Assembly (NCBI GenBank): GCA_002269645.1
Contig: NIVC01000618.1
Location: 124,001 to 188,000, forward strand
Reading direction: 5' to 3'
Source: Macrostomum lignano
Taxonomy: Eukaryota
DNA: 64,000 bases
The notes under the pieces were generated by a model. It saw only the letters and a program-made list of their open reading frames with translations. It searched no databases and was not told the DNA's origin. The stretch's first letter is position 1. The number at the start of each line of letters is the position of its first letter. Made by a program: the position numbers and the translations under genes. Below, piece by piece: positions 1 through 39,624 of the stretch.

Positions 1-1049
1 AATTCGACACCGATAACTCCGATCCCCCCAAGAGGATTAAAGAGGCTGCGATGGGATGGGGTTCCAAGCACCGGCGCCTCCCCTCCCACGGGATCGGCAC
101 ACTGTGGGAACTATATTGCTCCCGAATAGGACAGCTCTGGTCCGCTCTCTTTGGAGAAGACGAGAGCGGAGGCAGAAAGTTGCAGACGGAAGAAGACCGA
201 GGCAAAGGCGAATGCGAAGACGGGGAGCTGGACAAGATGGACCGGAGAGAGCGGAGAGAGCGAGTGTGCGAGCTGGGAGAAACTAGGAAGAAATCCCCGA
301 GTTGCGAGTTCGCTGAGCACTCTCTCTCTCTCTCTCTCTCTCTCCCTCTCCCTTCCCAATCTGTCTCTGCATCTCTCAGCCTAAGCCCGAGAGCCCGAAC
401 TGCCTCCATAAGCCTGATGCAAACTCGCATCACGCAAGGCGGCCGGCACTGACAAGGGCGCATATAGGGCATATAAGTATGAGTCCAAATATGGAATCCA
501 ACTCAGGGGGGATGCTGACATCAAGCAGATTAAACCGTTCCCCACATCTCAAACCAAATCAAAGTCTATAATAGCAATTGGAAAATTATCAGTTCTAACA
601 GATACTCGTAAATCTGTCAGATGAGTGTTGAGCAGCCAATCTCGCCGCACTACCATATAAGGCAAAGGAAAATAGTTGCCAAAAGCAATACTTGCCCAAC
701 AGGCTAAAAATAGATTCGACTTCACAATGGGACACGCCAGATCGATAGAGAATCCAAGCCATTCACACTTAGTCCAGGCGCTTTCCTCTCTGCATGGGCA
801 TCCAGCAGCCGCCCACGCTGCCTTCATCTCCGCCATTAACCCTCCCCTCAACCTCAAGCATCGTCTCTTCATCTCCATTCTGTTTGCAATTTCTTTTTCT
901 CACTTCTTAACGGCCACCTAGAGTAGCGCGAGGTTAACCTGGACTAGAGGGCTAAAATCGATGGACTGCATACTCACATATGGGGCTATTTTTGGCTGCG
1001 GATTTATTTATAGACTGTCCGAATTGGACAGGTTGAGGACAGGCCACGC

Positions 1050-1959: not shown

Positions 1960-2672
1960 GATAGATTAACAATACCAACAGATAGATTAGCAACCCCCAT
2001 TGACAGATTAGCAATCCACACAGATAGCTCGTAGAGTAGCAATCCACACAGCTAAATTAGCAATCCACACAGATAGATTAGCAATCCACACAGATAGATT
2101 AGCAATCCACATAGATTAAAATCTGCATTGATAGATTAGCAATCCACACAGATAGATTAGCAATCCACACAGATAGATTAGCAATCCACATAGATTAGCA
2201 ATCCACACAGATAGATTAGCAATCCACACAGATAGCTCGTAGAGTAGCAATCCACACAGCTAAATTAGCAATCCACACAGATAGATTAGCAATCCACACA
2301 GATAGATTAGCAATCCACATAGATTAAAATCTGCATTGATAGATTAGCAATCCACACAGCTAAATTAGCAATCCACACAGATAGATTAGCAATCCACACA
2401 GATAGATTAGCAATCCACACAGATAGATTAGCAATTCACACAGATAGATTAGCAATTCACACAGATAGAGTAGCAGTCCACACTGATAGATTAGCAATCC
2501 ACACAGATAGATTAGCAATCCACACATATAAATTAGCAATCCACACAGATAGATTAGCAATCCACACAGATAGATTAGCAATCCACACAGATAGATTAGC
2601 AATCCACACAGATAGATTAGCAATCCACATAGATAGATTAGCTATCCACACAGATAGATTAGCAGTCCACAC
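1960..2672. repeat. 21-bp minisatellite (GATAGATTAGCAATCCACACA)n, inverted partner of 1050-1545
   Basis: About 33 units with an internal ~208-bp block duplication (gatagctcgtagagtagc occurs twice). It begins about 30 nt into the intron after exon 2706-2809. Confidence 0.95.
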
Positions 2673-2705
2673 AGACACATAACCCAGTAGAAATCGGTGG
2701 CTCAC

Positions 2706-5700
2706 TTCTCTTCTAGCCGCTGCTGCAGGTCGGACAGAATCCGCACGGCCTCCTGGTGATAGACGACCTCGGACGATACAAACTCGTACAGAGCGGCGAT
2801 GTGCTCAGCCTGCGCGCAAAGTTTTGAGTCATTTGTTCGAGTTAGATTATTTTAATCGATACTTTCACAGAAAATAATTTAAAACGGCTAGCCAAATCAA
2901 CAACTCACATCGGAATTGAGAAAGTTGACCATGGCATTTTCGGCCAGGTTTTTGCTCTCAACGAATTTCTCTTCGGCCATGCGCAGCTCCTCCTCGGGGT
3001 TCTTCGATCCTCCCGCTGCGGAAGGGTGAGCATCGGAGATTATCGAGAGTGGGGATTTGAGACAAGAGAGAGCGCTGGCGATCAAAACTGATCAGATTGA
3101 TCAGATTCGGGATTGATCAGCTTCGGGATTGATCAGATATGGGATTGATCAGATTCGGGATTGATCAGATTCGGGATTGATCAGATTCGGGATTGATCAG
3201 ATTCGGGATTGATCAGATTCGGGATTGATCAGATTCGGGATTGATCAGCTTCGGGATTGATCAGATTCGGGATTGATCAGATTCGGGATTGATCAGATTC
3301 GGGATTGATCAGATTCGGGATTGATCAGATTCGGGATTGATCAGATTCGGGATTGATCAGATTCGGGATTGATCAGATTCGGGATTGATCAGATTCGGGA
3401 TTGATCAGATTCAGGATTGATCAGATTCGGGATTGATCAGATTCAGGATTGATCAGATTCGGGATTGATCAGATTCGGGATTGATCAGATTCGGGATTGA
3501 TCAGATTCGGGATTGATCAGATTCGGGATTGATCAGATTCAGGATTGATCAGATTCGGGATTGATCAGATTCGGGATTGATCAGATTCGGGATTGATCAG
3601 ATTCGGGATTGATCAGATTCGGGATTGATCAGATTCGGGATTGATCAGATTCGGGATTGATCAGATTCAGGATTGATCAGATTCGGGATTGATCAGATTC
3701 GGGATTGATCAGATTCGGGATTGATCAGATTCGGGATTGATCAGATTCGGGATTGATCAGATTCGGGATTGATCAGATTCGGGATTGATCAGATTCAGGA
3801 TTGATCAGATTCGGGATTGATCAGATTCGGGATTGATCAGATTCGGGATTGATCAGATTCAGGATTGATCAGATTCGGGATTGATCAGATTCGGGATTGA
3901 TCAGATTCGGGATTGATCAGATTCGGGATTGATCAGATTCGGGATTGATCAGATTCGGGATTGATCAGATTCGGGATTGATCAGATTCGGGATTGATCAG
4001 ATTCGGGATTGATCAGATTCGGGATTGATCAGATTTGGGATTGATCAGATTCTTTACGAGCGCAATTTCGATTAAGGGAAGTGAGATAGTTGAGAAGCTT
4101 GAGCATGTTGATAGGGTATACAAACAAAAAATCTCATATTAAAATGAAATACGAAGCTTTACTGGACTAAGCACAGCCACGGGGTTACAAAGATACAATG
4201 GAGAAACAACAGAAAGTCTACTTAAGCAGCAACTAAACTAATAAATGAATATCATCACATCCAGGCTTTCACACCTCTCGCTACATCCGTTGTTCAAATC
4301 ACTTTACTCGCCCAATAATATTTCTCTCGATTGGAATTATCACGACTCCATCATCACCCTGCCCGTTTCTGCAGCATTTTGAGAATCTTTTCCCAGTAAA
4401 AATGGGGACAAAAAAGGAAACTTCAAGGTCGGCCAGTGGGCGAGAAGAATAAATGCAGACAGCTCAGATGATGCAGAAATCTGGGGTGGGAGCGGAGGAG
4501 AGGAAGGGAAGAATCAAACACACTGCATAAAGCAAAAGCGATCCCGGGGCCTCTTCGCTCCCTAATCCTATAATGCGCTTCCTTCGAATCCTAATCTCTT
4601 TCCACAGCTCCCCTCTCCTGCATCGCTCCCTATCCTCCTCGCAGGTCAAAATGGTGCACAGGGACAGAGGAAGGGACTACCGATATGTAGTGTAGTTTAC
4701 ATAAAAGTAAATATTAAAACGTTTTACTGCAGCTCGAGCTCACTAAATATATCCCAGCTAAAAGTGTTCTAAAGATAGATGGACGGATGGAAAGGGCGGC
4801 GGAGATTGAAAAGGAGCAATAAATCTTCTTCAAAGTCTGACAAGTTGCACTCGAGGGTGTGTACGCGCCTGTAGCGTATAAGGGGTTTTTCTGCCCAGAC
4901 TCGCAATTTTTTAGAGGGAAGGAGTGGCAGAGGGAGTGCCACTCGAGAGAGTCCGATACTCTAGCACTAACCCCCGATCTGCCCAGCCTCACCCTCGCCA
5001 TCAGCATTCGAACTATTTGCTTCTCAGCCTCTGATCCTCCTCTCTCAGCTGCTTCTCTCGCCATCCCAGCGAGTTATATTTTCCATTTCTCTATAGCTAA
5101 GCCAAGCACGCACCCACCCCAGCGCCCCGCGCCAGGTCAAGACTGCTGGAGCAGGCTATGCAAAACTTGGCGGGGATGAGGCGGGGTGGGATGCTGAGAC
5201 TGAGGCCGAATAAGTGCAGCTTTTCTATAGAATAGTTCGTGCTCTCTAAGGATATAGCTGTTCTATAGCTATTATACGAATGCAGCTCATAAATATAGAC
5301 TCTCACAAGGCAGCAGGAAATTGATGAGGATTAGTTGTGTTAATTCATATCACAGCAATACGATGCCACTTCCTCAAATATCTTTCCGAGAAATTGAAAC
5401 ATCTAATAATTTTCTTAAAATGTGATTTATTAACGCTAATTAGTACCGATTTTTACATTCACTACGCTGTATATCAGCGCGCAGTATTATTAGGCGCGCA
5501 GTATCATTAAGCGCGCAGTATCATTAGGCGCGCCAGAGCATATTGTTTTTATATTTGTATTGCAGCACAGTAAAACTAACTGGGATCGCATGCAGTCTTT
5601 GTAAAGTCTTTGTCTATTAAACTATTACGACACTTTAATGGTTGAATTTAGTACAAAGTATAGTACAAAATTTTAATTAGTACACGGCGTACTCTATACA

Positions 5701-8700
5701 CGATGACAACCCAGTGCGCTCTTATGCGTTAAAAAATTGACTTCAAACGAGAGAAAAATGTAAAGAAAGGAAATTAGATGGGGAAAATAGGAGAGACAGA
5801 GAGGGTTAGGACTCGGGTAACCCCTCCAATCCCTGAATTGCTGCACAATATGCCTGCTCGAAGCAAAAGCAAACAATGGGCCGAGAGGGCAGCCAGTTGT
5901 TGTGTAAAAATCAAGCAACGGGACGGGTCAAACGGGCCAGAAAAGATTGGGGGAAAATGCCTGAGCAAACTGGGCGAAGCGGGGGAGCGAGAGAGAGGGG
6001 GCGTAAATCCCTCACTCGTCTCCCCGTGACCCTGACGAGGTCTTAGCGCAATCTCAGCTGCTTCCCTCATCTACAGCTGCCTACATCTGCAGTTAGTACA
6101 CTGGAGGTACACAGACCTCGCCTACAAGCAAGGCAAGTCGCCCCAACTGATGTTGCCTAGTAGGCATCGGGACTCAAGCGGGGTCCGGAATGAAGAATTA
6201 AGAGATGAAAAAAGGGACAGACAAGCGGGATTTGATGGAGGAGAGAAAGCTGCGAGACAGCGAGAGTGAGAGAACACTACTGTGCTCGCACCGGGTGAGA
6301 GACTTCAACGAGAAAGGAGAGAGGGGGGAGTGAGGCAGAAGAGGCAAAGTACGGCGGCGATTTAGGATGAATAGGGAAAAGACGAGAGACGGGACGAGAG
6401 AGAAGAGCAGGCGCAGGGTGTCCGGGCAGGCAGTAGAGGAGTTTGAGCACGGGAAAGGGGATGAGGGAGGAGCGCATTAGCTCTGTCAGCCTCTCTGAGC
6501 TCCATTGCCAGTGGTATTGATTTGGGAAGGCTAAAGGGGTAGGCAGAGCCGGAGTCTCCCGCTAGGCTGCTATTCCGACTGTACAAGCCAAGAGGCGGTG
6601 ACTGAGGTGACTGGGGGGGGGGTTGGAGGGGGTGAGGGCGAAGGCGGCCGAGAGAAAGATGCAGAGCACAGACGGATACGGACAGGCTGGGAGATTTCAG
6701 GAGTGAGTCTGGAGCCCAGACTAAAGAGAAAGGCTAGTCTTAGTAGCCTGGTCTCAGTATGGCGCTGCTGGAATTTCAACAGTACAGCACACATTGATTA
6801 TATATTGCTACCATATTAATGCTCAATTAGATTACGAGAGAAGAGAGAGATGGAGAGATGAGGGCCCTGACAGCAAGGGATATTAGAAAACTAGGCTGTT
6901 TACTGCAGCCCTGCTTACCCACTACTCAATATTAATCCAATAGACTACGCGAACTATGAAATTTTCAATTATAAAATTGACAATATCTCCTCTGCAAGTG
7001 ATTCAAACTTGGCGCTAGATAAAACGAAACACGAGAATTGGAGTTGCGTTCTCTAGGCATAGAGACGGAAATAGAGAAGGAGATGGAGAGGGAGATAGAA
7101 TAAGATAGAGAGGCAGATATAGAGGGAGAGAGAGAGGGAGAGAGAGGGAGAGGGGAGAGAGGGAGAGAGAGGGGGGAGAGGGGGAAAGAGAGGGGGAGAG
7201 GGGAGAGAGGAAGAGAGAGGGGAGAGAGGGAGAGAGGGAGAGAGAGGGGGAGGGAGAGGGGGAGAGAGAGGGTGAGAGTGGGGGAGAGAGGAGGGCACCT
7301 CCAATCTCAGTCGCTGATACGGTGAAAAAAGAGCTGATAAGTCAATTATTTAATATTGCCGATATTTCAAATTTGGTAAATTATTCGTCAAGGCGAATAA
7401 ACTCACACCTCAGACCCATGTGAGATGTTGTCCATTATCGATTTAATGTGAAACAAAACTAACAAACTCCCTATTCAGATAATGCATCTTGCATCGAAAT
7501 TCAGCCTCAACTGAAAGTGAGGCTGATCCATAATACAGCCAGGTAAAACTTCTGGCCGCAGTTTAAACAGGGCAACTAGAAATAACAGAAAAATCAAAAA
7601 GCAAAGATTACGGAAATAAGAGAAAAACAAACAATTAAAGACTAAGGAATACCACATTGAAACATAAAAAATGAGCTAGAGAGTATAGGCGCGGAATGCG
7701 TGCGCTGTGCTATGGCACTGCAGCGACCACTTACCGCCGCCTGAATTTGATGATGCGGGGTTGCCGGTTGAGACACATTTTTATTAAACCAAATATACAT
7801 ACTGAGCACTAATTATTGTCCTTAAGAGGTTTCTAAAGGCTGTAAATGAGGTTTTCCCGCAGGAGGTTTTCCCGCCGAGGTTTCTCCGCAGGAGGTTTTC
7901 CCGCCAAGATTTTCCTGCGGCGAGGTTTTCCCGCAGGAGGTTTTCCCGCAGGGCTTTTTACAGTCGGAATTTCAAGTCAAATCCAATCAGATTTGAAATC
8001 TAGTCTTTTATTAGAGGCAGGGGGGTTGTGTGCACCCTGGCGCACTTTAGGCGACAGGCACACAACCGGCGAGAGGCATTACTGCCCATTCCGCCGACTC
8101 CCCTGAGCAGGCATACAAGCGCGCGGATACGTACGCAGGCACACACTCACACAGGAGTGTACAGCGGCCCTAACTTTATCAATTGTTAGGCATGTACACT
8201 TCACTGCGCCTTGGGGGGTTGGCTCTCAAGGCCGTTAATTGCACAAGCGAGCCAAGCCGAAATTCCAATTCAGCCCCAAATTAATGTGGCTGCACTTGGA
8301 ATCGAGCCTGGGCCGCTGGCACACCAGAGCAGCTGCGCTACCGCTGGGCTACGGCCCCCCGGCGAAATCTAGTCTAGTTCTAATCTAGTCTAGTTTTTAA
8401 TCTAGTCTAGTTTATGTCTAGTCTAGTTTTTAATCTAGTCTAGTTTATGTCTAGTCTAGCCTAGTCTAGGCCTGTTCTAATCTAGTCTAGTTTTTAATCT
8501 AGTCTAGTTCTAATCTAGTCTAGTTTTTAATCTAATTTAGTTCTAATCTAGTCTAGTTTTTAATCTAGTCTAGTTTATGTCTAGTCTAGCCTAGCCTAGG
8601 CCAGTTCTAATCTAGTCTAGTTTTTAATCTAGTCTAGTTTATGTCTAGTCTAGTTTATGTCTAGTCTAGCCTAGTCTAGGCCTAGTCTAGGACTCTAGGC

Positions 8701-11700
8701 TGGCCCTCCTGTGTGTGAATCGCCCCAGAACCCCCTGGGCCAATTTTGGTGCACACCAGCCCCAAATGAATGTGGGCCGCGCAAGGATTCGAACCAGGGG
8801 CCTTGGCTGGAGAGTCAGATGCGTTTAGCACTGAGCTGCCCAGCCCTCGATCCCCCTAACCTCATTATTGCGCTTCTTACCTTTGCGCTTCTTGCAGTCA
8901 AAGTCAAGCCGGCGGCCTTCCAGCTTCTTGCGATGATGCTGAATCAAGTTTTATGATCCAAAAGGAAATTGTTACGTTGCAACTGTCTAATTCATAAATG
9001 TCAATAGCAAATGCAAAAGCAACAAGATAGTTTCTCCTTACATTGATCTCCTTGATTTCTCGGTGCTGCAAGCTGGTGAACGGGTCTAGAAAGTTCTGCT
9101 TAACATTGTCCTCAAGACTGTACTTGATCTCCGCCATCTGCTTGTACGCCTCGCCTCCGTCTACTAAAGCGTTGCCTAAAAAAGCAGAAGGGGCAGGTTG
9201 AAAGCAGTGAAAGTCATAAACTCATTGATAATGCTATTTGAAGACTTTAAATATTTCTAATAAAGTGCTTCTACCGTAAGCACGGTTGAAAAAGTTCGAC
9301 TGCAGATTTAATGTAATACTAAACAATAACATGAAAGTGTACGAGCGCAGTACGCTCACTGAAGTACTGAGGCGAAGGTAGTACACTCACTGAGGAACGA
9401 TGGGGAGGGCAGCACACTCACTGAGGAACGATGGGGAGGGCAGCACACCCAACTGAGAAACAATGGGGAGGGCAGCACACCCAACTGAGAAACAATGGGG
9501 AGGGCAGAACACCCAACTGAGAAACAATGGGGAGGGCAGAACACCCAACTGAGAAACAAAGGGGAGGGCAGCACACCCAACTGAGAAACAAAGGGGAGGG
9601 CAGCACACCCAACTGAGAAACAAAGGGGAGGGCAGCACACCCAACTGAGAAACAAAGGGGAGGGCAGAACACCCAACTGAGAAACAAAGGGGAGGGCAGC
9701 ACACCCAACTGAGAAACAATGGGGAGGGCAGAACACCCAACTGAGAAACAAAGGGGAGGGCAGAACACCCAACTGAGAAACAAAGGGGAGGGCAGCACAC
9801 CCAACTGAGAAACAATGGGGAGGGCAGAACACCCAACTGAGAAACAATGGGGAGGGCAGAACACCCAACTGAGAAACAATGGGGAGGGCAGAACACCCAA
9901 CTGAGAAACAATGGGGAGGGCAGAACACCCAACTGAGAAACAATGGGGAGGGCAGAACACCCAACTGAGAAACAAAGGGGAGGGCAGCACACCCAACTGA
10001 GAAACAATGGGGAGGGCAGAACACCCAACTGAGAAACAATGGGGAGGGCAGCACACCCAACTGAGAAACAAAGGGGAGGGCAGCACACCCAACTGAGAAA
10101 CAATGGGGAGGGCAGAACACCCAACTGAGAAACAATGGGGAGGGCAGAACACCCAACTGAGAAACAATGGGGAGGGCAGAACACCCAACTGAGAAACAAA
10201 GGGGAGGGCAGCACACCCAACTGAGAAACAATGGGGAGGGCAGCACACGCGCTGAGAAACAATGGGGGGAGGGCAGCACATGAACTAAAGACCAGGCCAT
10301 GGGTTCGGAACTGAAGCGCCACTCTGGAATCTCACCAAGCACAGAGTCGGAGCCGAGATCTTTGCCATGCTTGACCATAGACTCGCCGAGAATGCCCTCG
10401 GGCTGCGGGTACACCATGCTCTTGTTCTTATTCTGCAGATTGTTAAATCCTTTCACGGCTGTCATTCGAGCGCGAGCCACTGAAATTGTTTTATAAATAT
10501 AACACATATATTACAGCACAGAGCTAGCAACTGGCAAAGTTGCCTGAGCTATAGATTAAAGCATAAAGCTTACTTGGGTTCGGCTGCAGATACTCCTGAG
10601 TCCTGGCAATCAGATCTTCAACCATCCTTCCGGCTACATCAATTTTCTGTAATAATTATAAATATTGCTATCACTAATGTTTAGGTTAAATAGCATAACA
10701 TAAGCAACATGAGAACAGAGACATACCCGCTCCATTTCCATGAAATCTGGGTCCAACTCTGTTCCACGGGCTCCAGCAATTTTCTCATTGAAAAGCTATA
10801 AATTATAGTTGAGTAAGGAATATTTAGAAAAGGAACTACTATTATAAGACAGGTATGCATAGAAATAAAATTAATTCAAGCTGATAAACCTAATGTTGAA
10901 ATGTAATAAAAAACGATTATTTTTAGATAGGTCTCTGCAGTGTCAATTAATTGTAGGCACATATAGATTACAGTTATCTTAAAACCTTCAAAAGACCTAA
11001 AAAGAACATTTATTTTAAGGTACAGTCAGAGGTTTTAGGATAGGGACCAGTTGGGACACAGAAGATACTAAAAGGACATTTTTGTTGAATGCAATTAAAT
11101 GCAATATTTCTAAATTGAACATAGTTAAAAACTAATAAATCCCATAGCTAGGGTAAATATGATATAAAATAAAAAAGTATATTTTCTTATTTAGAGATTT
11201 AAAATGAAAATTAGAAAGTTAGGATAGATGGCCAAGGGACCTACAGCCTGACTAGAGGTGACCTAGACCCCTAGCACCTTTTGGATATACCCTTGATTAA
11301 TTGAGTCAAAGCGAAGTAAGTCAAGACAAGATGAATTAAAGTCAAAATAGTAATAGTTTTAATAGTTTTAGATATCAATAAAGCAAAATTTCATTCCATG
11401 TCATCAAAAAAACAAAATCTATTAATACCAACAATTCTTAAAATCATTTTCATTAGAATCTAACATATTAATATTATTTATTAGTATAGTTATGAAACAT
11501 ATACTCCTGAATTTTTTAATATCTTTTAACTTTTTATTTTGCATTTAAACACAAAGAAATAAAATTGCTTGAAATTATTATTAAAAAACTACCTTGAAAT
11601 CCAGATGTCATTAAAATTCAGAACTGTTATTAGCAACTTTATTATTATGATGCCTTTAAAACATAAAGTGTGTTTTTTAAAGAAATGAAGCTTGTTATAA

Positions 11701-11884
11701 AGACTACTACTTAAAAATTTTTTTTCATCTAGAACCTAACACACACGGAACAAGTAATGATTAGAATGTACATTTGCTGGCACAGGTAAAATGTAAAAAA
11801 TAGCAAATATTCAACAACCAACAGAGCGAAAGAGCGTACCTGATTCGCTTTATTTAGCTGCTTCTTAAATCCGGCGAGAGACAT
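2706..11884 (-). CDS. endoA: Endophilin-A (SH3GL family), N-BAR domain exons; linker/SH3 exons not found in the window
   Basis: Hand-spliced GT-AG exons: 11840-11884 (MSLAGFKKQLNKANQ), 10727-10795 (LFNEKIAGARGTELDPDFMEMER), 10574-10646 (KIDVAGRMVEDLIARTQEYLQPNP), 10336-10479 (ARARMTAVKGF...YPQPEGILGESMVKHGKDLG), 9042-9175 (NALVDGGEAYKQMAEIKYSLEDNVKQNFLDP...), 8881-8938 (HHRKKLEGRRLDFDCKKRK), 2909-3015 (GGSKNPEEELRMAEEKFVESKNLAENAMVNFLNSD), 2706-2809 (AEHIAALYEFV...RLEE). Phases are consistent and the motifs (QPNP, YPQxE, KKLEGRRLDFD) are endophilin-A hallmarks. Confidence 0.96.
3087..4052. repeat. 16-bp minisatellite (GATTGATCAGATTCGG)n
   Basis: About 60 near-identical units, ending about 70 nt from an endophilin acceptor. 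Confidence 0.97.
5100..7000 (-). mobile_element. Possible heavily degraded non-LTR (LINE) remnant inside an endophilin intron
   Basis: Only fragmentary resemblance, e.g. LRADIQRSECKNR..ISVNKSHF near 5420-5490, similar to the segment after YADD in LINE RT. Many stops and no intact motif. Confidence 0.25.
7075..7295. repeat. GA-rich polypurine low-complexity tract
   Basis: Almost exclusively G and A on the + strand. Confidence 0.95.
7735..7740 (-). CDS. endoA: Candidate 6-nt microexon (GCGGCG) of endophilin-A, adding Gly-Gly
   Basis: Minus strand reads catcaaattcAG|GCGGCG|GTAAGT. It has a consensus donor and a TTCAG acceptor, a ctcaac branch-like motif about 30 nt upstream, preserves frame, and fits the phase-1 intron between exons 8881-8938 and 2909-3015. 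Confidence 0.6.
8000..8358 (-). mobile_element. tRNA-derived SINE family A, copy 1
   Basis: Head GGCCGTAGCCCAGCGG...GGCTCGATTCCAAG (A/B-box-like). The body is alignable by eye with 21520-21860 and 39185-39330. Confidence 0.8.
8368..8846 (-). mobile_element. tRNA-derived SINE family B with (ACTAG)n-type tail
   Basis: Head GGGCTGGGCAGCTCAGTGCTAAA...GGTTCGAATCC at 8846-8775, a short body, then a CTAG-rich simple-repeat tail at 8690-8368. Confidence 0.65.
9385..10280. repeat. 32-bp minisatellite (CAACTGAGAAACAATGGGGAGGGCAGCACACC)n in endophilin intron 4
   Basis: About 28 units. The 32-aa periodic ORFs in three minus frames confirm the 32-bp period. Confidence 0.97.
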
Positions 11885-12808
11885 TGAAACTATGCTTATG
11901 AAAAGGTTTTAGACCAGAAAAGGCTAGGCAGTGTGATTTAAGAACAATAAAAATGCAACAAACAATGCAATTATCGCGCCGCGATAACACAAATGAACGT
12001 TTGTAAAAATGGCAAAAAATTTCCGCCTTGAAATTTTAAACAACTTTAGAAGTAAATAAACAAAAAATACGGACAAAAGTCTAAAGCAGACGTAGAGAAA
12101 TTATATGCACTACTAAAATACTGTTGATCAGCTTCCTTCAAAGACCATTTTTATTTAGCTGAGGATGAATAGCTCTTTATCGTTAGCATAATTGACTATA
12201 GTTTATAAAATCCTCGGTAGCAGGCCTTTTTTGCGATGCGATATGCAGTAGCTAGAGTGTACATGGAATTCAAGAGCAGTTAGCCAAGGTATTGAGATAC
12301 AATTTTACTACAGAGAAACTAGACACATAAGCATTAGCTTGGCGATTGAAGCTTTCTAACTGCTAATCCTGACAACTGAAAAACCATCGAGCTTTTTTAT
12401 TTTTTAGTTATAACTCATGCATAGTAATGTACTGTAGTATGCATAGAGAAGATTCTAATAATTTTCGTAACATAACCTTCATGAAAATTAGTGGATATTC
12501 TGTTGTACTTTTTAGTTGCGACTTAGTTGCCATTACTTAACCATATAGATCGACATTTCATTTACCCTGCAGTTCTTTCTCGCAGTAATATGTGCCCCAA
12601 TCCTTTTCATCGTTATTAACTCACAAGCTAAATATAATCGCAATTTACGAGAAACTTTGAATTTCAACTCTAAAACTTTCCTTAGTTTCTCTACACATTT
12701 ATAAAGTACTACAATCTATTTCCTGACTAAACAGAACGATAGATGGACATATGCATTGAAACACTTTTGTGGGTCTGCTAAACTGCAATGTGCACTTTCA
12801 GAGAGGCA

Positions 12809-15550
12809 CTAGCCAATCCCAACCCCCGTTGGGGCTTTCCGTCCAAACTCCAACCACAGTTTTCCCCATCCCCAAAATCCCCGATGCAAAGAATCCCCAT
12901 CCAAAGAACCCCCATCGATAGAATCACCGATCCGAATAATTCCCCATTCAGTGAATCCCCTACTCAAGAAATCCCCGATCTACAGAAGCCCCCTATCTAA
13001 AGAATCCCCATCCAAAGAATCCTTCATCCACAGAATCCAAATATAAAGAATCCTCCATCCATCCAAATCCAAAGAATCCCCCCCCCCAGTAAATCCCCAT
13101 CCAAATAATTCACATCATAATCCCCATCTAAATAAACCATAGATCTCCCATCTAAATAATCCATAGATCTCCCATCTAAATAATCTCAGCAAGTCCCTCT
13201 TAAGCCTTCACATCTCATTAATTCCAATAGGTAAGATTTTATACGTGCATTTCAATAAATCCCCTGTAAATCTTGAAATCTTAGAATTCTCTTCCGAGCA
13301 AGCATCCCCTGATAGAAAGTACCCCCACCAAGATTAGTGAAACAATTTCCTCAGCTAGCCAATTCCAACCCCCGTTGGGGCTTTCCGTCCAAACTCCAAC
13401 CACAGTTTTCCCACGCAATAAAATTTCACCCAACTGAATCTCAAATTTAAAGAATCCCCCATTCAAAGAATCCACCACCCATAGAATCTACGATACAAAG
13501 AATCTCACATGCAAAAAGCCCCCATCCAAAAAAACCTCCCATCGATAGAATCCCCGATCCGAAGAATTCCCCATTGAATGAATCCTCCTTCCTCCTATCT
13601 GAAAAATTGCCCATCCATAGAATATTACATGCAGAGAATCCCCATCCAAAGAACCCCCATCGATAGAATCCCCGATCCGAAGAATTCCCCTTCCAATGAA
13701 TCCCCCATCGACAGAATCCCCTAGCCAAAGAATCCCCCCATCCATCCATATCCAAAGAATCCCCCATCCATCCATATCCAAAGAATCCCCCATCCATCCA
13801 TATCCAAAGAACCCCCCCCATCCATCCATATCCAAAGAATCCCCCATCCATCCATTTCCAAAGAATCCCCCATCCATCCATATCCAAAGAATCCCCCATC
13901 CATCCATATCCAAAGAATCCCCCATCCATCCATATCCAAAGAATCCCCCATCCATCCCTATCCAAAGAATTCCCCAGATCCATCCATATCCCCCATCCAT
14001 CCCTATCCTAAGAATCCCCCATCCATCCCTATCCAAAGAATCCCCCATCCATCCCTATCCAAAGAATCCCCCCGATCCATCCCTATCCCCCCATCCATCC
14101 ATATCCAAAGAATCCCCCATCCATCCCTATCCAAAGAACCCCCCCCCGATCCATCCCTATCCCCCCATCCATCCCTATCCCCCGATCCATCCCTATCCCC
14201 ACATCCATCCCTATACAAAGAATCACCCCATCGATTCATATCCAAAGAATCCCCGACCTCCATCCATATCCGAAAAATCCCCCTCCAAAGAATCCCAATC
14301 CAAATAATCCCCATCCACAGAATCCCGATCAAAATAATGCAAAGATACACTCATCTCAATAAACCTCCATCAAAAGAAGCATTGGCCAAAGAGTCCCCTC
14401 ATCTAAAGAACCCCGTCCAAATAATCCAAAGAATCATACTCCAAAAAATCTCCATCCAAAGAATCCAAAGAATCCCCCGTCCAAATAATCCCCCATCAAT
14501 AAAATCCTGGGCTAAAGAATCCCCCCATCTAAAGAATCCCCGTCCAAACAATCCCATCATATTCAAAGGATCCCTTTATCGAAAGAATATTTCATCTATA
14601 GAATCCCCCATTCAAAGAAACCTCCATCGAAAGAACCCCGCATCGATGGAATTTCCCAATGAATCACCTATCTAAAGATATCCATTAGAAGCAGCCCTCA
14701 TGGAAGGAATCCCCAATCCACAGAATTCCCCCCCAAGACTTGACATCTCAACAATTCCCCCCAAGCCTAGAGACCTCAGTAATTCTCTCTTAAGCTTTGA
14801 CATCTCAGCAATTCGCTCTCAAGACTTGAAATTTTAGGAATTTCCCCGCCAAGACTTGACATCTCAGCAGTCCTCCAAGTAAGCCTTTATATCTCAGTGA
14901 TTCCCCCAGTAAGCCTTGGCATCTCAGCAGTCCTCCAAGTAAGCCTTTATATCTCAGTGATTCCCCCAGTAAGTCTTGACATCTTAGCAATTTCTCCCCG
15001 TCCAAAACCTAACATCTCAGCGATTCCCCCAGGCCTTGACATTTTAGAAATTCCCCCCCCGACGCCAGCAGTTCCCTTATTAAGCCTTTATATCTCAGAA
15101 ATCCCCCCAAGCCTTAACATCTCAGCAATCCCCCCACCAAGCCTTGGCATCTCAGAAAGTCCCTCTTCAGCCTTGAGAGCGAATTGCTGAGATGTCAAAG
15201 CTTAAGAGAGAATGAACTGAGGTGTCAAGGCTCAGTGATTTCCTCAGTAGGTCTTCACAACTTAGCAATTTCTCCCCGTCCAAATGCCTGACATCTCAGA
15301 AATTCCCCCACGCCTTTAAACCTCAGCAATTTCTTTGGCATCTCAGCAAGTCCCTTTAAGGCTTGAAATCTCAGTAATTCCCCAGTAAGCCTGCATATCT
15401 GAATAATTCCCCAGTATGTCTTGACATCTTAGCAATCTCACCCGATCAAGCATGCCCTAAGAGCAAGCGTCCTTTTGATAGCAAGCATCCCCTGATAGAA
15501 AGTAACCCAAGCAAGACAGTGAAACAATTTACTCAGCTAGTACAATAATT
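12809..15550 (-). mobile_element. Non-autonomous Helitron-like element(s), repeat-rich 3' portion
   Basis: Minus strand has CCCC-AAC-GGGG hairpin + 8 nt + CTAG at 12809-12812 (followed by T) and again at 13355-13358. The interior is made of AAAGAATCCCCATCC-type repeats (12860-14760) and GACATCTCAGCAATTCCCCCAAGCCTT-type repeats (14740-15470). Confidence 0.65.
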
Positions 15551-18268: not shown

Positions 18269-19564
18269 CTAACAGTTTGACGGCACGGGGACCCGGCCAT
18301 CCGTTCTACCACCACTATGCCGGTACTCAAACTCGCACATGCCTCGGCCGTTGACGATTCGACCGTCTGGTAGCTTGCAGCGAATCTTGGCCAGCACACA
18401 ATAGAGTCTGGCCTCCCAGTTCCAGCCGCAGTAATAGGATGGTGCGTCAACAGAGGTCACCTCGAGTTCGTAGCGTTGATTTCCTTGAACTGTGAGATCC
18501 ACTTGATAAGTCTTGGGCGGTGGCTCGGTCTCGCCAATTTGCCAGAGCGACCGGGAGCTGGCGGTCGCGGCCAGCTTCTTCTTGTCAGGAGTGATGACGA
18601 AGCCGGTGATGAGGTGGGTCATCAGCACTGGCAGGCAGACAAGGTGGAAGGCGATGCAAGTTGAGTCTTCCAGTACGAAGTATTGCAAGATGTATCGATG
18701 AAAGTCGTTCCATTTTCTGTACAGCCCGTAGCTTCTGTCGCGCATGCTGTCCAAGTTCAGCTGCCACTGACCGACGTCTTGCACTTTGATCTCGCCGGTG
18801 AGCCGGCCGAACTGCTCATAGTGCGTCTGGTGCGCCTCCCGCAGCCGCTGGAAGAAGTCGCCGCTCCATGGCTCCCGCGCGATGGCCTCGCAGGTCGGGC
18901 CGGCGTCCATATCGGTGTCGAAGTCGAAGCAGGGCGTCTCCGCCCGCCAGGTGAGGTCGAAGCTGACCTGCCGCACCTGACGACCGCGGCGCTGGCGCAG
19001 CTCTCCGTTGAACGTGACGCGCCACTCTTTCATTGGTGTAACAGTCTGGTAGGCGAGCCCGCCAGCGTTCCAGCTGCTGTCGTCCACCGCGTCAACGTCG
19101 GTGGCGGGACCCCAAGGCCACTCCAGTACGTCGCCGTCCAGAATAGTCTCGGGTGGCCGGATCACCATGATGCATTCGGCCTTGAGATGATGCCGCCGCT
19201 GGATGCCGGCGCCGAAGTACCAGCCGTCGCGGCTGTAGCCGTTGAAATAGGCGGCGTCGATGGCCTGCGGATGCGCGCTCAGTGGCTGGACTCGCTCCAT
19301 GTCTGCCTCGCTAGCGTGGCTTTTTCTGCCGTAGCCGCTGCCGCCTCCGTGTCCACCACCAGCGTCGCCACCGTCGCCGCCGCTGTCGCCGCGAAGCTTC
19401 CGCAGCCGCAGTAGGGCGTAGAAAGCGGCGAACTTGATGGGGTAGAACGGGCCAGGCTGGCTGTACACGCTGAGGTACTTGCCAGCGCTGTGACGGCGGA
19501 GCGCCAGTATCAGTGTTGCTATGGCAACGACAGCTCCTGAGCCGATGTACAGTACGACCGACAT
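18269..19564 (-). CDS. Intronless 431-aa uncharacterised protein with N-terminal TM/signal anchor and a probable CrtC/AttH/tocopherol-cyclase-like double beta-barrel domain
   Basis: Uninterrupted ORF with strong GC3 bias, a hydrophobic N-terminus, motifs AIDAAYFNG, WNAGGL, FDFDTD, AIAREPWS, HQTHYEQFG, RDRSYG..RKW..FHRY, and AATAAA at 18119-18124 (minus). The fold assignment is recollection/inference. Confidence 0.9.
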   Translation of the reverse strand: MSVVLYIGSGAVVAIATLILALRRHSAGKYLSVYSQPGPFYPIKFAAFYALLRLRKLRGDSGGDGGDAGGGHGGGSGYGRKSHASEADMERVQPLSAHPQAIDAAYFNGYSRDGWYFGAGIQRRHHLKAECIMVIRPPETILDGDVLEWPWGPATDVDAVDDSSWNAGGLAYQTVTPMKEWRVTFNGELRQRRGRQVRQVSFDLTWRAETPCFDFDTDMDAGPTCEAIAREPWSGDFFQRLREAHQTHYEQFGRLTGEIKVQDVGQWQLNLDSMRDRSYGLYRKWNDFHRYILQYFVLEDSTCIAFHLVCLPVLMTHLITGFVITPDKKKLAATASSRSLWQIGETEPPPKTYQVDLTVQGNQRYELEVTSVDAPSYYCGWNWEARLYCVLAKIRCKLPDGRIVNGRGMCEFEYRHSGGRTDGRVPVPSNC

Positions 19565-24312: not shown

Positions 24313-24982
24313 CTTCGATGTCGTCACTCGTCGTTCTTATATGTGTGAATAAGTCCTTATTTTGTTTGTCCGTTTATTGTTTGTTTGTCTGTCCGCCAAT
24401 CTAGGTTTCAACATCCAGCAGCAGTCCGGGCGCCGCTTGAGAACACTCGCGCGCTGTAGAAAACGGGCTGCAGGTGAGACACCGTGAGGACGTCGGCCTG
24501 AAAGCCTCTGCAGAGAGATGGGGGGGGACTGCGGCGGCCATAGCCGATGCAGCTTTCCTCCGTTCCCCCGGTCTTCTCGGTTGGCCTGGGCCAGCTTCAC
24601 GCACCCTCCCCTCCCCCGCCACCCTACGCGACAAGACCGCGGGATAAAGCGAGCAATATGACTGACTCACTGCGTCCGTCCGGAGTCGCGCGCCACCTCT
24701 ATAACCGCAGGCTGAATGGGGGGAGGTGACAGGTTTCTGGGAGGGGGGTGGTGTTGTTTGCAGTGCAGTTTGCAGCATCTGGGCTTCATCCTACACTGTT
24801 CCCAGATCACCTCTGATATCCAATATAGCTGAGCGGGCTAGAACAAAAAATAAAGCAACTCTCTTTTAGAAGGAGACATTCACCAGCAGCTGCACTACGA
24901 TAAAATGGTGTGTCGCAGAGCCCACTATGCAGTTTGCGTTCCCAGTTTTCCCCTGTCTCCCGCTGCCATCAACAATTCCACA

Positions 24983-34579: not shown

Positions 34580-35615
34580 TATTGATCCAAACGATCATTT
34601 TTCTGATCTGAAAGCTGAGACAGGACTTCTGCAGCGGCCCAATAACCACTGACGACGTTGTGCTGTTCGCTCGGAAAACACCAGGCGGCAAGACGCTCGG
34701 CCCCGACGAAGTCCCGGTCGAAGCGTTGTGTGGCCTCCCAGGTCACAGGCGTCATGAAACCGCGTGCTCTCCGGCGCTCCTGCGCCCACCGAGTGGACCG
34801 TCGCGCACATCGTGCCGATTCCGAAGAAGGCTGGGACATCGCGGAAAGAAGACCACCGTGGGAACTCGCTGATGTCTTGCATCGCGAAGCTCTTCAACCG
34901 GCTGCTGTTCGATCGCCTGCAGTCGATGCTGGACCCGTACCTGTGGTTCGAGCAGAACGGAAGCAGCGGTGCAATGACACAGATCCTCGCACTCCGCCGT
35001 GTCATCGAGCAGGCGCGCATCCGGCAGTCTTACGCTGATCATTGCCTTCGTTGACTTTCGAAAGGCATTTGACTCGGAGTTGAGAGCCGTGCTTCCCTTC
35101 GTCCTTCGAGCCACCGGGTCCCACAGCAGCCAACCGTCGCTTCATATCGCTATATTGCGACACTCGAGCTACTGTGGTGACGGCGGATGGCCTGTCTGAC
35201 CTTTTCGACACTTTATCAGAAGTTCTGCAGGGCGACACGCTGGCACCGTTCCTCTTCATGGTGCTGCTGGACTGGTTGCTTCGGACTGCACTCTCCTTGG
35301 CGCAGATGCAGACGCATAGGCGAAAAGCGCCTGAGCATGCTTGGCTACGCCGACGACCTCGCCCTCTTGTTGTCCTCGTCCGTTGAAGGCGCCAGGCGCC
35401 AGATCGACAGGCTGGTCGAGGTGGCATCGAGCATCGGTCTGGTTGTCAACACGCTGAAGACCTAGGTGCTGAGTGTGCCTGCCAACATCCCAGCGGACCT
35501 GACGTGCCGCGGCACAGATGGGCAGGCTCGCACGCTGCCAGCGGTTCACCTACCTCGGCGGTCTGGTGCCGCCCTCCAATCCAAAGCGCTGCTTGACCGC
35601 CAGAGGGCTTGGCTG
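34580..35615 (+). mobile_element. Degraded non-LTR retrotransposon RT (RTE-like)
   Basis: Frameshifted RT motifs WTVAHIVPIPKK, RGNSLMSCIAKLFN, FVDFRKAFDS, VLQGDTLAPFLF, GYADDLALL, GLVVNTLKT. A second short related fragment (KEDHRGISLISLV) lies near 34390-34440. Confidence 0.92.
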
Positions 35616-37204: not shown

Positions 37205-38754
<1,550 letters not shown>

Positions 38755-39184
38755 AGTCTCCCGTAAGTAGCAGATATTATACGAAAAATAGTTGTTCGGT
38801 CCTCGATCGCGAGAGCAAGTGCAACTTAATTTTTTTTTAAATGAGCAAGTCAACTGAGACCCTCAATACAAACGCTAGGCCTTTCTTAATTCATCGAAGA
38901 AAAAGCTCATTTAGACAGCAAATAGAAATAGTGAAATCTCTAGAGCGTTATGGACAAACATACAAACAAACAAACAAACATTAGAGATTTAGTGTATTGT
39001 GATTTGATTATTTCTTAATTAATAGCTATTTTTTCGCACCAGACTACTTATACTCCGTGTTTGTTGCTTGTTTGTTTCGTTTGAGTTGCACTCGCAAGTT
39101 TATCGAGCTGATTTTTTCATGAAATGCTCGGCAAAAAGCAGAGTTCTAGAGAAACTTCAGTTGTTCGAATCTCTGTTGTGCGAG

Positions 39185-39330
39185 GATGTAGCCCAGCGGT
39201 CCAGGCTCGATTTCAAGTGCAGTCACATTTATTTGAGGCTGAATTCGAATCTCGGCTTGGCTCTGCTCGTACAATTAACACCCTTGAGGGCCAACCCCCA
39301 AGGCACAGTGAAGTGTACATGCTTAACGAT
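39185..39330 (+). mobile_element. tRNA-derived SINE family A, truncated copy 3
   Basis: GTAGCCCAGCGGTCCAGGCTCGATTTCAAGTGCAG...CCAACCCCCAAGGCACAGTGAAG matches copies 1 and 2. Confidence 0.75.
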
Positions 39331-39624
39331 AGTCAATTTTTGAGAAGTGACTCAAAAAACCAGATTCTGCTGCTCCGTGCAATAATTCCAAAGCGATATG
39401 AATCTACTAATCCCTCAGATTGGTGTATTGATTCGAGAGACTTCTATGCACACGCACCTGCTTTCCGCAGTCGTGAGGATATATCTCTATTTGCCTACAA
39501 AAGCCCCACCACCTGCAACACCTTGCAGGGGCCAACTGTTCCGATCAGTAAATACCGGTTGACTCGCGCAGGAACTTGCAGAGCTCCGCTTCCAAAGTTG
39601 CTAAAGGCTGTATTCGAGTTAGGC

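What the first reader, a model, noticed from the sequence alone, without database searches (positions are those of the whole stretch)
7729..7748. Candidate 6-nt microexon inserting Gly-Gly at the distal tip of the endophilin BAR domain
Seen: TTCAG|GCGGCG|GTAAGT inside a 5.9-kb phase-1 intron. Inclusion changes KRK-AGGSK to KRK-GG-AGGSK. Established: this basic loop (KKKRQGK in vertebrate endophilin A1) lies between BAR helices 2 and 3 at the dimer tips, and 3-27-nt microexons are typically neural and enriched in vesicle-trafficking genes. As I recall (needs verifying), the vertebrate gene has no intron here, although its other exon sizes match (45/69/73/144/134/104). Inference: a lineage-specific, possibly regulated microexon that standard annotation would miss.
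Basis: partly seen in the sequence, partly recalled or inferred. Interest (0 to 1): 0.7.

Follow-up and report, generated by a model that had tools for sequence, protein, structure and literature searches.

The report
Candidate 6-nt endophilin-A microexon, flatworm
A 6-base sequence with perfect splice signals sits in a long intron of the endophilin-A gene of the flatworm Macrostomum lignano; if spliced in, it would add two glycines at the membrane-binding tip of the protein, which is plausible because annelid and mollusc relatives carry tiny exons in the same intron, but no transcript shows that it is used.

Summary
The motif is real but lies on the minus strand: TTCAG|GCGGCG|GTAAGT, with the hexamer at window 7740..7735. 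It sits in a 5,865-nt phase-1 intron (8880..3016) of endophilin-A copy Mlig008239g2 of Macrostomum lignano. Inclusion would change KRK-AGGSK to KRK-GG-AGGSK, at the helix 2/helix 3 turn of the BAR domain.

For:
- It is the only frame-preserving, stop-free YAG...GTRAGT candidate in the intron.
- The same phase-1 intron exists in Schistosoma, a scallop and the annelid Owenia. It holds annotated microexons in Owenia (9 nt, Gly-Gly-Ser) and the scallop (21 nt). Biomphalaria isoforms differ by 4 residues at this site.
- A sister copy (g1) with identical DNA at this junction is annotated with +6 nt there.

Against:
- The g1 extra residues are Ala-Ala, which is intron sequence before exon 7 with no AG. 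They are not Gly-Gly.
- No transcript with the inclusion junction could be found.
- The three gene copies are 98-99% identical, so conservation among them says nothing.
- Shuffled introns give such a motif by chance in 8-16% of cases.
- The diverged paralogue has a 92-nt intron with no room for an exon.

Verdict: plausible and unproven, about 50% real. If real, it is a new member of a known kind.

The parts
7735..7740 (-). Candidate 6-nt microexon GCGGCG (phase 1-1). It would read G|GC GGC G|CG, adding Gly-Gly.
   Evidence: Sequence. It is the only GTRAGT-flanked, in-frame, stop-free candidate in the intron. It is present in gene copies g1 and g3 as well.
7741..7790 (-). Putative 3' splice-site region: ...TTTAATAAAAATGTGTCTCAACCGGCAACCCCGCATCATCAAATTCAG|. 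There is no AG in the last 45 nt, the pyrimidine tract is moderate, and there is no UGC within 50 nt.
   Evidence: Sequence. The ttcag acceptor core matches those of exons 4 and 6.
7729..7734 (-). Putative 5' splice site GTAAGT. All six intron positions match the U1 consensus.
   Evidence: Sequence. It matches the consensus as well as or better than the eight constitutive donors of the gene.
8881..8938 (-). Exon 6 (58 nt), HHRKKLEGRRLDFDCKKRK plus the first base of the next codon; donor AAAG|GTAAGA.
3016..8880 (-). Intron 6, 5,865 nt, phase 1, rich in tandem repeats. It would split into 1,140 nt upstream and 4,719 nt downstream of the candidate.
2909..3015 (-). Exon 7 (107 nt), (A)GGSKNPEEELRMAEEKF...; acceptor CCGCAG|CGGGAGG.
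9042..11884 (-). Exons 1-5 of endophilin-A, the N-terminal amphipathic helix through BAR helix 2: 11884-11840, 10795-10727, 10646-10574, 10479-10336, 9175-9042.
2706..2809 (-). Exon 8 (104 nt), the end of BAR helix 3. tblastn found no match to the linker and SH3 parts of the protein in this window.
   Evidence: In copy g1 the remaining exons lie 4-6 kb further downstream.

Best explanation
The hexamer is a genuine, alternatively included 6-nt microexon of Macrostomum lignano endophilin-A. It would be the flatworm version of a microexon site that sits in the same phase-1 intron of endophilin-A genes in other spiralians. Mechanism (inferred): the spliceosome would recognise the CAG acceptor and the perfect GTAAGT donor, and join exon 6 to GCGGCG to exon 7. 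The protein would gain Gly-Gly directly after the KKRK basic cluster at the end of BAR helix 2. The tip turn would lengthen from AGGSKNP to a glycine-rich GGAGGSKNP. This should change the flexibility or reach of the basic, membrane-contacting tip of the BAR dimer. Shown: the motif, the frame, the position in the fold, homology of the intron, and the existence of microexons there in an annelid and a mollusc. Inferred: that this hexamer is spliced in, that inclusion is regulated, and any functional effect.
For: (1) The donor is a perfect GTAAGT and the acceptor is CAG. It is the only such in-frame, stop-free candidate in 5.9 kb. (2) The intron is homologous in other species. Exon 6 starts at HHRKKL and ends in phase 1 after the basic cluster in the M. 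lignano paralogues, Schistosoma, the scallop Ylistrum and the annelid Owenia. (3) That intron carries annotated phase 1-1 microexons: Owenia has 9 nt, AG|GAGGTTCAG|GT, giving Gly-Gly-Ser; Ylistrum has 21 nt, ESGAQKS. Biomphalaria RefSeq isoforms X5 and X2 differ by 4 residues exactly here. Many other mollusc and brachiopod proteins carry Gly/Ala/Ser-rich insertions of variable length at this point. (4) Sister copy g1 (PAA62080.1, 374 aa) is annotated with 6 extra nt at exactly this junction, although its DNA at the exon 6 end, the exon 7 start and the motif is identical to the window. That annotation was built from transcript and read alignments and then read off the genome (PMC5730564). An unplaced 6-nt insert tacked onto exon 7 would look like this. 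(5) The insertion point is at a helix-helix turn of reduced model confidence, where 2 extra residues are tolerable. The loop length varies widely among homologues.
Against: The g1 product has Ala-Ala, which is intron CCGCAG preceded by TT. It does not have the Gly-Gly that GCGGCG would give. By my recollection of STAR's junction stitching, a GCGGCG insert would give a different split (KGAAGG), so g1 does not prove this hexamer. No inclusion-form protein exists in the 15-billion-protein collection, and the junction pattern gave no hit in metagenome contigs. Transcript-derived proteins that are probably from other Macrostomum species (P0002, P0003) show the skipped form. Copies g1, g2 and g3 are 98-99% identical along the whole intron, so retention of the motif carries no information. 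The diverged paralogues have a 92-nt intron without any exon. Chance expectation is 8-16% per intron of this size. There is no UGC motif within 50 nt of the acceptor.
Confidence: 0.5

Rival explanations
1. Chance motif: a splice-like AG-N6-GTAAGT in a long, repeat-rich intron that is never, or only negligibly, included. Endophilin-A from this locus would be made only as the annotated 372-aa form.
For: Shuffles give at least one comparable candidate in 7.5-15.8% of introns of this size and composition. There is no transcript or protein record of KRKGGAGGSK. Conservation among the three copies is uninformative. The pyrimidine tract is moderate and there is no UGC enhancer near the acceptor. The related Macrostomum-like transcripts are the skipped form.
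Against: It would then be a coincidence that the only strong candidate lies in the very intron that holds microexons in an annelid and a mollusc. It would also be a coincidence that it encodes Gly-Gly like the Owenia GGS exon, and that a sister copy shows a variant of exactly +6 nt at this junction.
Confidence: 0.35
2. A 6-nt length variant at the exon 6/7 junction is real but does not come from GCGGCG. It could come from an unassembled allele or copy with an AG 6 nt upstream of exon 7 (a tandem acceptor giving Ala-Ala), from another weak 6-nt exon in the intron, or it could be a pure annotation artefact.
For: The annotated g1 insert translates as Ala-Ala, exactly the genomic CCGCAG upstream of exon 7. 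UniRef lists two identical M. lignano entries for this 374-aa form. The intron holds about 25 AG-N6-GY sites, for example ...ttatctag|CGCCAA|gtttga.
Against: All three assembled copies have TT, not AG, before CCGCAG. No canonical AG|CNGCNG|GT exists in the window's copy or in g1, and the full list of 6-nt candidates in all three copies shows none either. The other 6-nt candidates have poor donors.
Confidence: 0.12
3. The motif serves as an intermediate in stepwise (recursive-type) removal of the 5.9-kb intron and is then spliced out, leaving no trace in mature mRNA.
For: A 3' and a 5' splice site lie close together inside a long intron.
Against: After joining to exon 6 the junction reads AAAG|GCGGCG, which does not rebuild a GT donor. 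At 5.9 kb the intron is short compared with the long introns where, from general knowledge, recursive splicing has been described. Nothing here tests this directly.
Confidence: 0.03

Closest known systems
Annotated microexons in the same intron of spiralian endophilin-A genes (Owenia fusiformis 9 nt; Ylistrum balloti 21 nt; Biomphalaria glabrata isoforms X2 and X5, 12-nt difference)
   Same: Same gene family. Same intron position after the KK/RR-K basic cluster at the end of BAR helix 2. Same phase (1-1). Long host intron (5-7 kb). Small Gly/Ser/Ala-rich inserts; the Owenia exon encodes Gly-Gly-Ser.
   Different: The M. lignano candidate is shorter (6 nt), is not in any annotation, and has no transcript support. 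M. lignano exon 6 is 3 codons shorter and exon 7 is 2-3 codons longer than in the annelid and mollusc, so one-to-one homology of the exon itself cannot be shown.
Endophilin B (EndoB / SH3GLB1) neural microexon, dependent on SRRM3/4 (the eMIC domain)
   Same: A microexon in an endophilin-family gene. One study found it at the same position in fly and mouse and in all insects examined (PMC8797185). It is also regulated in islet cells.
   Different: It is in a different paralogue (B, not A). I did not compare its position in the protein with the site studied here. Regulation of the M. lignano candidate is unknown, and it has no UGC motif near the acceptor. No paper found describes an endophilin-A microexon.
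Vertebrate endophilin-A1 BAR domain (PDB 1X03, 1ZWW)
   Same: The M. lignano BAR domain aligns end to end (E = 1e-70). The insertion site corresponds to the KKKRQG-KIPDEE tip loop.
   Different: The human loop is 2 residues shorter than the skipped flatworm form and 4 shorter than the included form. Whether vertebrates have an intron here was not tested.

Membership tests
Endophilin-A (SH3GL) N-BAR/SH3 protein | N-terminal BAR domain with full-length similarity to solved endophilin-A BAR structures | tested here: met
   1X03 E = 1.2e-70 over residues 1-246. Pfam PF03114 is precomputed for the identical protein P0001.
Endophilin-A (SH3GL) N-BAR/SH3 protein | C-terminal SH3 domain | tested here: met
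   P0001 (372 aa, 100% identical over the exons in the window) carries PF00018, PF07653 and PF14604. tblastn found no SH3-coding match in the window.
Alternatively spliced microexon (3-27 nt) | Length of 27 nt or less that keeps the reading frame and has no stop codon | tested here: met
   6 nt, phase 1-1, reads Gly-Gly.
Alternatively spliced microexon (3-27 nt) | Canonical AG acceptor and GT donor of usable strength | tested here: met
   ttcag|GCGGCG|gtaagt. The donor matches the consensus as well as or better than the gene's constitutive donors.
Alternatively spliced microexon (3-27 nt) | Presence of the exon in mature mRNA | tested here: inconclusive
   The inclusion-form protein is absent from the collection. 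The junction pattern is absent from metagenome contigs. Sister copy g1 is annotated with +6 nt, but these read as Ala-Ala.
Alternatively spliced microexon (3-27 nt) | Conservation of the exon and its flanks in orthologous introns of related species | not testable with these tools
   Only the three 98-99% identical in-genome copies were available. No other Macrostomum genome could be fetched. Positional homology to annelid and mollusc microexons was shown.
Neural eMIC/SRRM-dependent microexon programme | UGC-containing enhancer close upstream of the 3' splice site | tested here: not met
   The nearest TGC is at -68. Owenia has one at -28 and the scallop at -44.
Neural eMIC/SRRM-dependent microexon programme | Neuron-enriched inclusion | not testable with these tools
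   No tissue-resolved expression data were accessible.

The most novel reading that the evidence does not exclude
Endophilin-A of spiralian animals (flatworms, annelids, molluscs, brachiopods) carries an old, regulated microexon site at the membrane-binding tip of the BAR domain, parallel to the ancient neural microexon of endophilin-B. The M. lignano GCGGCG exon would be its shortest member. Inclusion would tune tip flexibility, and through it membrane binding or curvature sensing, in particular cell types such as neurons.
Probability: 0.3. Interest if true: 0.55.

Novelty: new member of a known kind. Interest (0 to 1): 0.4.

Why it matters
If the exon is used, it would be one of the shortest functional exons known, placed in a well-understood membrane-bending module. 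It would also show that annotation built on standard read aligners misses it. The broader pattern found here is a microexon site in the same intron of endophilin-A across annelid, mollusc and possibly flatworm genomes. That pattern suggests conserved splicing control of the BAR-domain tip, which the searched literature does not describe for endophilin-A. Its effect on liposome binding and tubulation could be tested directly with recombinant BAR domains. If the exon is not used, this is simply a chance splice-like motif in a repeat-rich intron.

Tried and rejected
- **Exact look-up of the 374-aa inclusion protein:** not in the collection.
- **Second homology search with a 118-aa junction fragment:** it returned only distant, short proteins and no M. 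lignano fragments.
- **Scan of metagenome contigs for exon 6 end, N(0-9), exon 7 start:** 0 hits.
- **Conservation among copies g1, g2 and g3:** the whole intron is 98-99% identical, so this is uninformative.
- **Search for a canonical AG|CNGCNG|GT that would explain the Ala-Ala form:** none in the window's copy or g1, and none in the 6-nt candidate list for all three copies.
- **Attempt to derive the Ala-Ala form as a STAR artefact of a GCGGCG insert:** my reconstruction predicts a different split, so I rejected it as proof.
- **Locus look-ups that failed, so the intron state in insects and vertebrates stays untested:** Biomphalaria X2, Apis, Cloeon and a newt.
- **Transposon or repeat origin of the motif:** the 300 nt around it is single-copy in the window and fetched loci, apart from a neighbouring 15-mer array.
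- **Non-coding RNA or a gene on the other strand:** no Rfam match in 2500-12000, and only ORFs of 86 aa or less.
- **Alternative donor 20 nt into the intron (AATGAG|GTTAGG):** rejected because it breaks the frame (sequence).

Full report
**1. Observation**

The + strand at 7729-7748 reads cacttaccgccgcctgaatt. Its reverse complement is AATTCAG|GCGGCG|GTAAGTG. The feature is therefore on the minus strand, with the hexamer at 7740..7735.

tblastn with remembered fly and human endophilin sequences, followed by reading the splice sites, gave eight minus-strand coding exons. Their sizes are 45, 69, 73, 144, 134, 58, 107 and 104 nt. Their coordinates are 11884-11840, 10795-10727, 10646-10574, 10479-10336, 9175-9042, 8938-8881, 3015-2909 and 2809-2706. 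All have AG/GT borders.

The motif lies in intron 6 (8880..3016), which is 5,865 nt and phase 1. Skipping gives ...DCKKRK-AGGSKNPEEE. Inclusion gives ...DCKKRK-GG-AGGSKNPEEE.

**2. Identity of the gene**

The spliced product is 100% identical over 244 aa to PAA79736.1, BOX15_Mlig008239g2, of the free-living flatworm Macrostomum lignano. That protein has BAR and SH3 domains. It aligns end to end with the human endophilin-A1 BAR domain, PDB 1X03, at E = 1e-70. The human loop DYKKKRQG-KIPDEE is opposite the flatworm DCKKRK(GG)AGGSKNPEEE.

An AlphaFold2 model of the annotated protein has mean pLDDT 85. It places helix 2 at residues 109-175, a coil at 176-181 and helix 3 at 182-207. The junction K174|A175 is thus at the helix 2/helix 3 turn, where confidence dips to 79.

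**3. Is the motif more than chance?**

In the real intron this is the only stop-free, frame-preserving AG-N(3..27)-GTRAGT candidate.

| Pattern, with a YAG acceptor, in 2,000 dinucleotide shuffles of the intron | Shuffles with at least one |
|---|---|
| YAG-N(3..27)-GTAAGT | 7.5% |
| YAG-N(3..27)-GTRAGT | 15.8% |
| YAG-N6-GTAAGT | 1.45% |

On sequence alone the motif is suggestive but not significant once one allows for the many introns a reader scans.

- The donor (GCG|GTAAGT) is as good as the best constitutive donors of the gene.
- The acceptor core ttcag is the same as for exons 4 and 6.
- There is no AG in the 45 nt upstream of the acceptor, and no UGC within 50 nt.
- The 300 nt around the motif is single-copy in the sequence I hold, apart from a neighbouring 15-mer tandem array.
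- There is no Rfam match and no sizeable ORF on either strand.

**4. Gene copies within the genome**

M. lignano carries three near-identical copies: g1 (L001), g2 (the window) and g3 (L002). All three have the motif. However, the entire intron is 98-99% identical between copies apart from large repeat indels, so this conservation is uninformative.

The diverged paralogue pair Mlig003884g1 and Mlig017845g1 is 70% identical in protein. It has the same intron position and phase, but the intron is only about 92 nt and holds no internal exon.

**5. A +6-nt form in the annotation**

The 90%-identity cluster of the protein has three members. Copy g1 (PAA62080.1) is 374 aa and reads KRK-AA-AGGSK, so it has 6 extra nt at exactly this junction.

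The g1 DNA is identical to the window at the end of exon 6, the start of exon 7 and the motif. Ala-Ala is exactly what results if exon 7 is extended 6 nt upstream (G|CC GCA G|CG). That extension is preceded by TT, not AG. No canonical AG|CNGCNG|GT exists in the window's copy or g1, and the full 6-nt candidate list for all three copies shows none either.

The annotation was built from BLAT-mapped Trinity transcripts and from STAR end-to-end read alignments. These were assembled with StringTie and TACO and then read off the genome (PMC5730564). A non-canonical 6-nt extension is what one expects when an aligner must place six transcript bases it cannot locate. An aligner that tacks all six bases onto one flank would prefer the exon 7 side: GCGGCG matches CCGCAG at 3 of 6 positions and GTAAGA at 1 of 6.

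My reconstruction of STAR's stitching rule, however, predicts a 1+5 split (KGAAGG) rather than the observed form. From memory, STAR's default settings also disallow mismatches at non-canonical junctions. I therefore treat g1 as evidence that some 6-nt variant exists at this junction, not as proof that it is GCGGCG.

**6. Comparative evidence**

This changes the picture most. The loop length varies among 125 homologues, and the variation sits exactly after the basic cluster. Examples:

- Biomphalaria KEKG-SNVTE (isoform X5) versus KEKG-AAGG-SNVTE (isoform X2).
- Arion KEKG-APGG-TTITE.
- Gigantopelta KDKG-APAG-STVTE.
- Mytilus KDK-ETTSKGAG-SQVTD.
- Haliotis rufescens, with an 11-residue insert.

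The two Biomphalaria RefSeq isoforms differ by 4 residues precisely here. I fetched four more loci:

| Species | Locus | Exon 6 end | Intron | Microexon |
|---|---|---|---|---|
| Ylistrum balloti (scallop) | L005 | ...GAT AAA G\|GTATAT, phase 1 | about 6.4 kb | 21 nt at 24885-24905, TGACAG\|AGTCCGGAGCACAGAAGTCAG\|GTAACT, encoding ESGAQKS |
| Owenia fusiformis (annelid) | L007 | ...GTT AAA G\|GTATTT, phase 1 | about 6.7 kb | 9 nt at 34845-34853, TTAAAG\|GAGGTTCAG\|GTATGA, encoding Gly-Gly-Ser |
| Schistosoma | L006 | phase 1, ...GAT CGA A\|GTAAGT | 18 kb | none annotated |
| Cichlidogyrus (monogenean) | L008 | intron lost | none | none |

The intron is therefore old within Spiralia and not specific to the Macrostomum lineage. 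It hosts small Gly/Ser/Ala-coding microexons in at least two phyla. A 6-nt Gly-Gly exon in the flatworm fits this pattern.

One caveat applies. M. lignano exon 6 is 3 codons shorter and exon 7 is 2-3 codons longer than in the annelid and mollusc. Exon 7 begins AGGS, which resembles the end of the mollusc inserts. One-to-one homology of the exon cannot be established.

**7. Direct transcript evidence: none**

- The inclusion protein is not in the 15-billion-sequence collection.
- A fragment search found no M. lignano pieces.
- The junction pattern is absent from metagenome contigs.
- Two transcript-derived proteins from run assemblies, probably other Macrostomum species (P0002 and P0003), show the skipped form.

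Raw RNA-seq could not be reached with these tools.

**8. Literature**

Searches for microexon with endophilin, SH3GL, Macrostomum or planarian found only the endophilin-B (EndoB/SH3GLB1) microexon. That exon is SRRM-dependent, and one study found it at the same position in fly and mouse (PMC8797185). Nothing was found on an endophilin-A microexon.

**9. Verdict**

The candidate is well formed and correctly placed in the protein. It sits in an intron that carries microexons in other spiralians, and a +6-nt variant at the junction is on record.

Inclusion of GCGGCG itself is unproven, and the recorded variant encodes the wrong residues. The 'lineage-specific' inference is wrong, and regulation is unknown.

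| Explanation | My estimate |
|---|---|
| The hexamer is a real exon | about 0.5 |
| Chance motif | about 0.35 |
| Another source for the 6-nt variant | about 0.12 |

If real, it is a new member of a known kind. The interest is moderate, and most of it lies in the apparently undescribed spiralian-wide microexon site at the endophilin-A BAR tip.

Noticed in passing
L001 (NIVC01001975.1) 13637-13643; equivalent to window 3016-3021 (-): Sister copy g1 (PAA62080.1) is annotated as 374 aa with KRK-AA-AGGSK. This corresponds to a 6-nt upstream extension of exon 7 (CCGCAG) behind a non-canonical TT, although the DNA is identical to the window.
   Followed up: partly
window 3010-3015 (-): Exon 7 starts CAG|CGGGAG|GATCG, so a second AG lies 6 nt inside the exon. 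Using it as a tandem acceptor would delete Ala-Gly and give KRK-GSKNPEE. No annotated product shows this.
   Followed up: no
window 7848-7952 (15-mer), 3095-4052 (16-mer x60), 8366-8690, 9389-10280 (32-mer x28): The introns of the gene are packed with tandem-repeat arrays. The 15-mer array about 100 nt upstream of the candidate exon (sense unit CTGCGGGAAAACCTC, which contains UGC) has about 7 copies here, whereas in copy g1 the array spans about 280 bp (roughly 19 units), so its copy number varies between gene copies.
   Followed up: partly
window 8846-8880 (-): Reading through the exon 6 donor gives GKKRNNEVRGIE in frame. This faintly resembles the uninterrupted fly loop RRRQAKDDEIRGAE (tblastn hit). 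It is probably chance, and a stop codon follows soon after.
   Followed up: no
L007 about 18480-18546 (Owenia fusiformis): The Owenia endophilin-A model has a further small exon, coding about 8 residues (GHRCITFG), inserted at the exon 3/exon 4 junction (LQPNP|...|ASRAKM). The other homologues examined lack it.
   Followed up: no
window 39124-40725 (+): A 533-aa ORF matches Pfam PF00858 (amiloride-sensitive sodium channel, DEG/ENaC) at E = 6.5e-13. It is likely an exon or single-exon part of a neighbouring channel gene.
   Followed up: no
window 37668-38603 (-): A 311-aa ORF has RNase H and reverse-transcriptase-like matches (PF00075 at 5.8e-8). It is likely a retrotransposon fragment.
   Followed up: no
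L003 6660-6750; L004 6221-6311: The diverged M. lignano endophilin-A paralogues (Mlig003884g1 and Mlig017845g1) keep the same phase-1 intron, but it is only about 92 nt, against 5.3-6.8 kb in the three Mlig008239 copies.
   Followed up: yes
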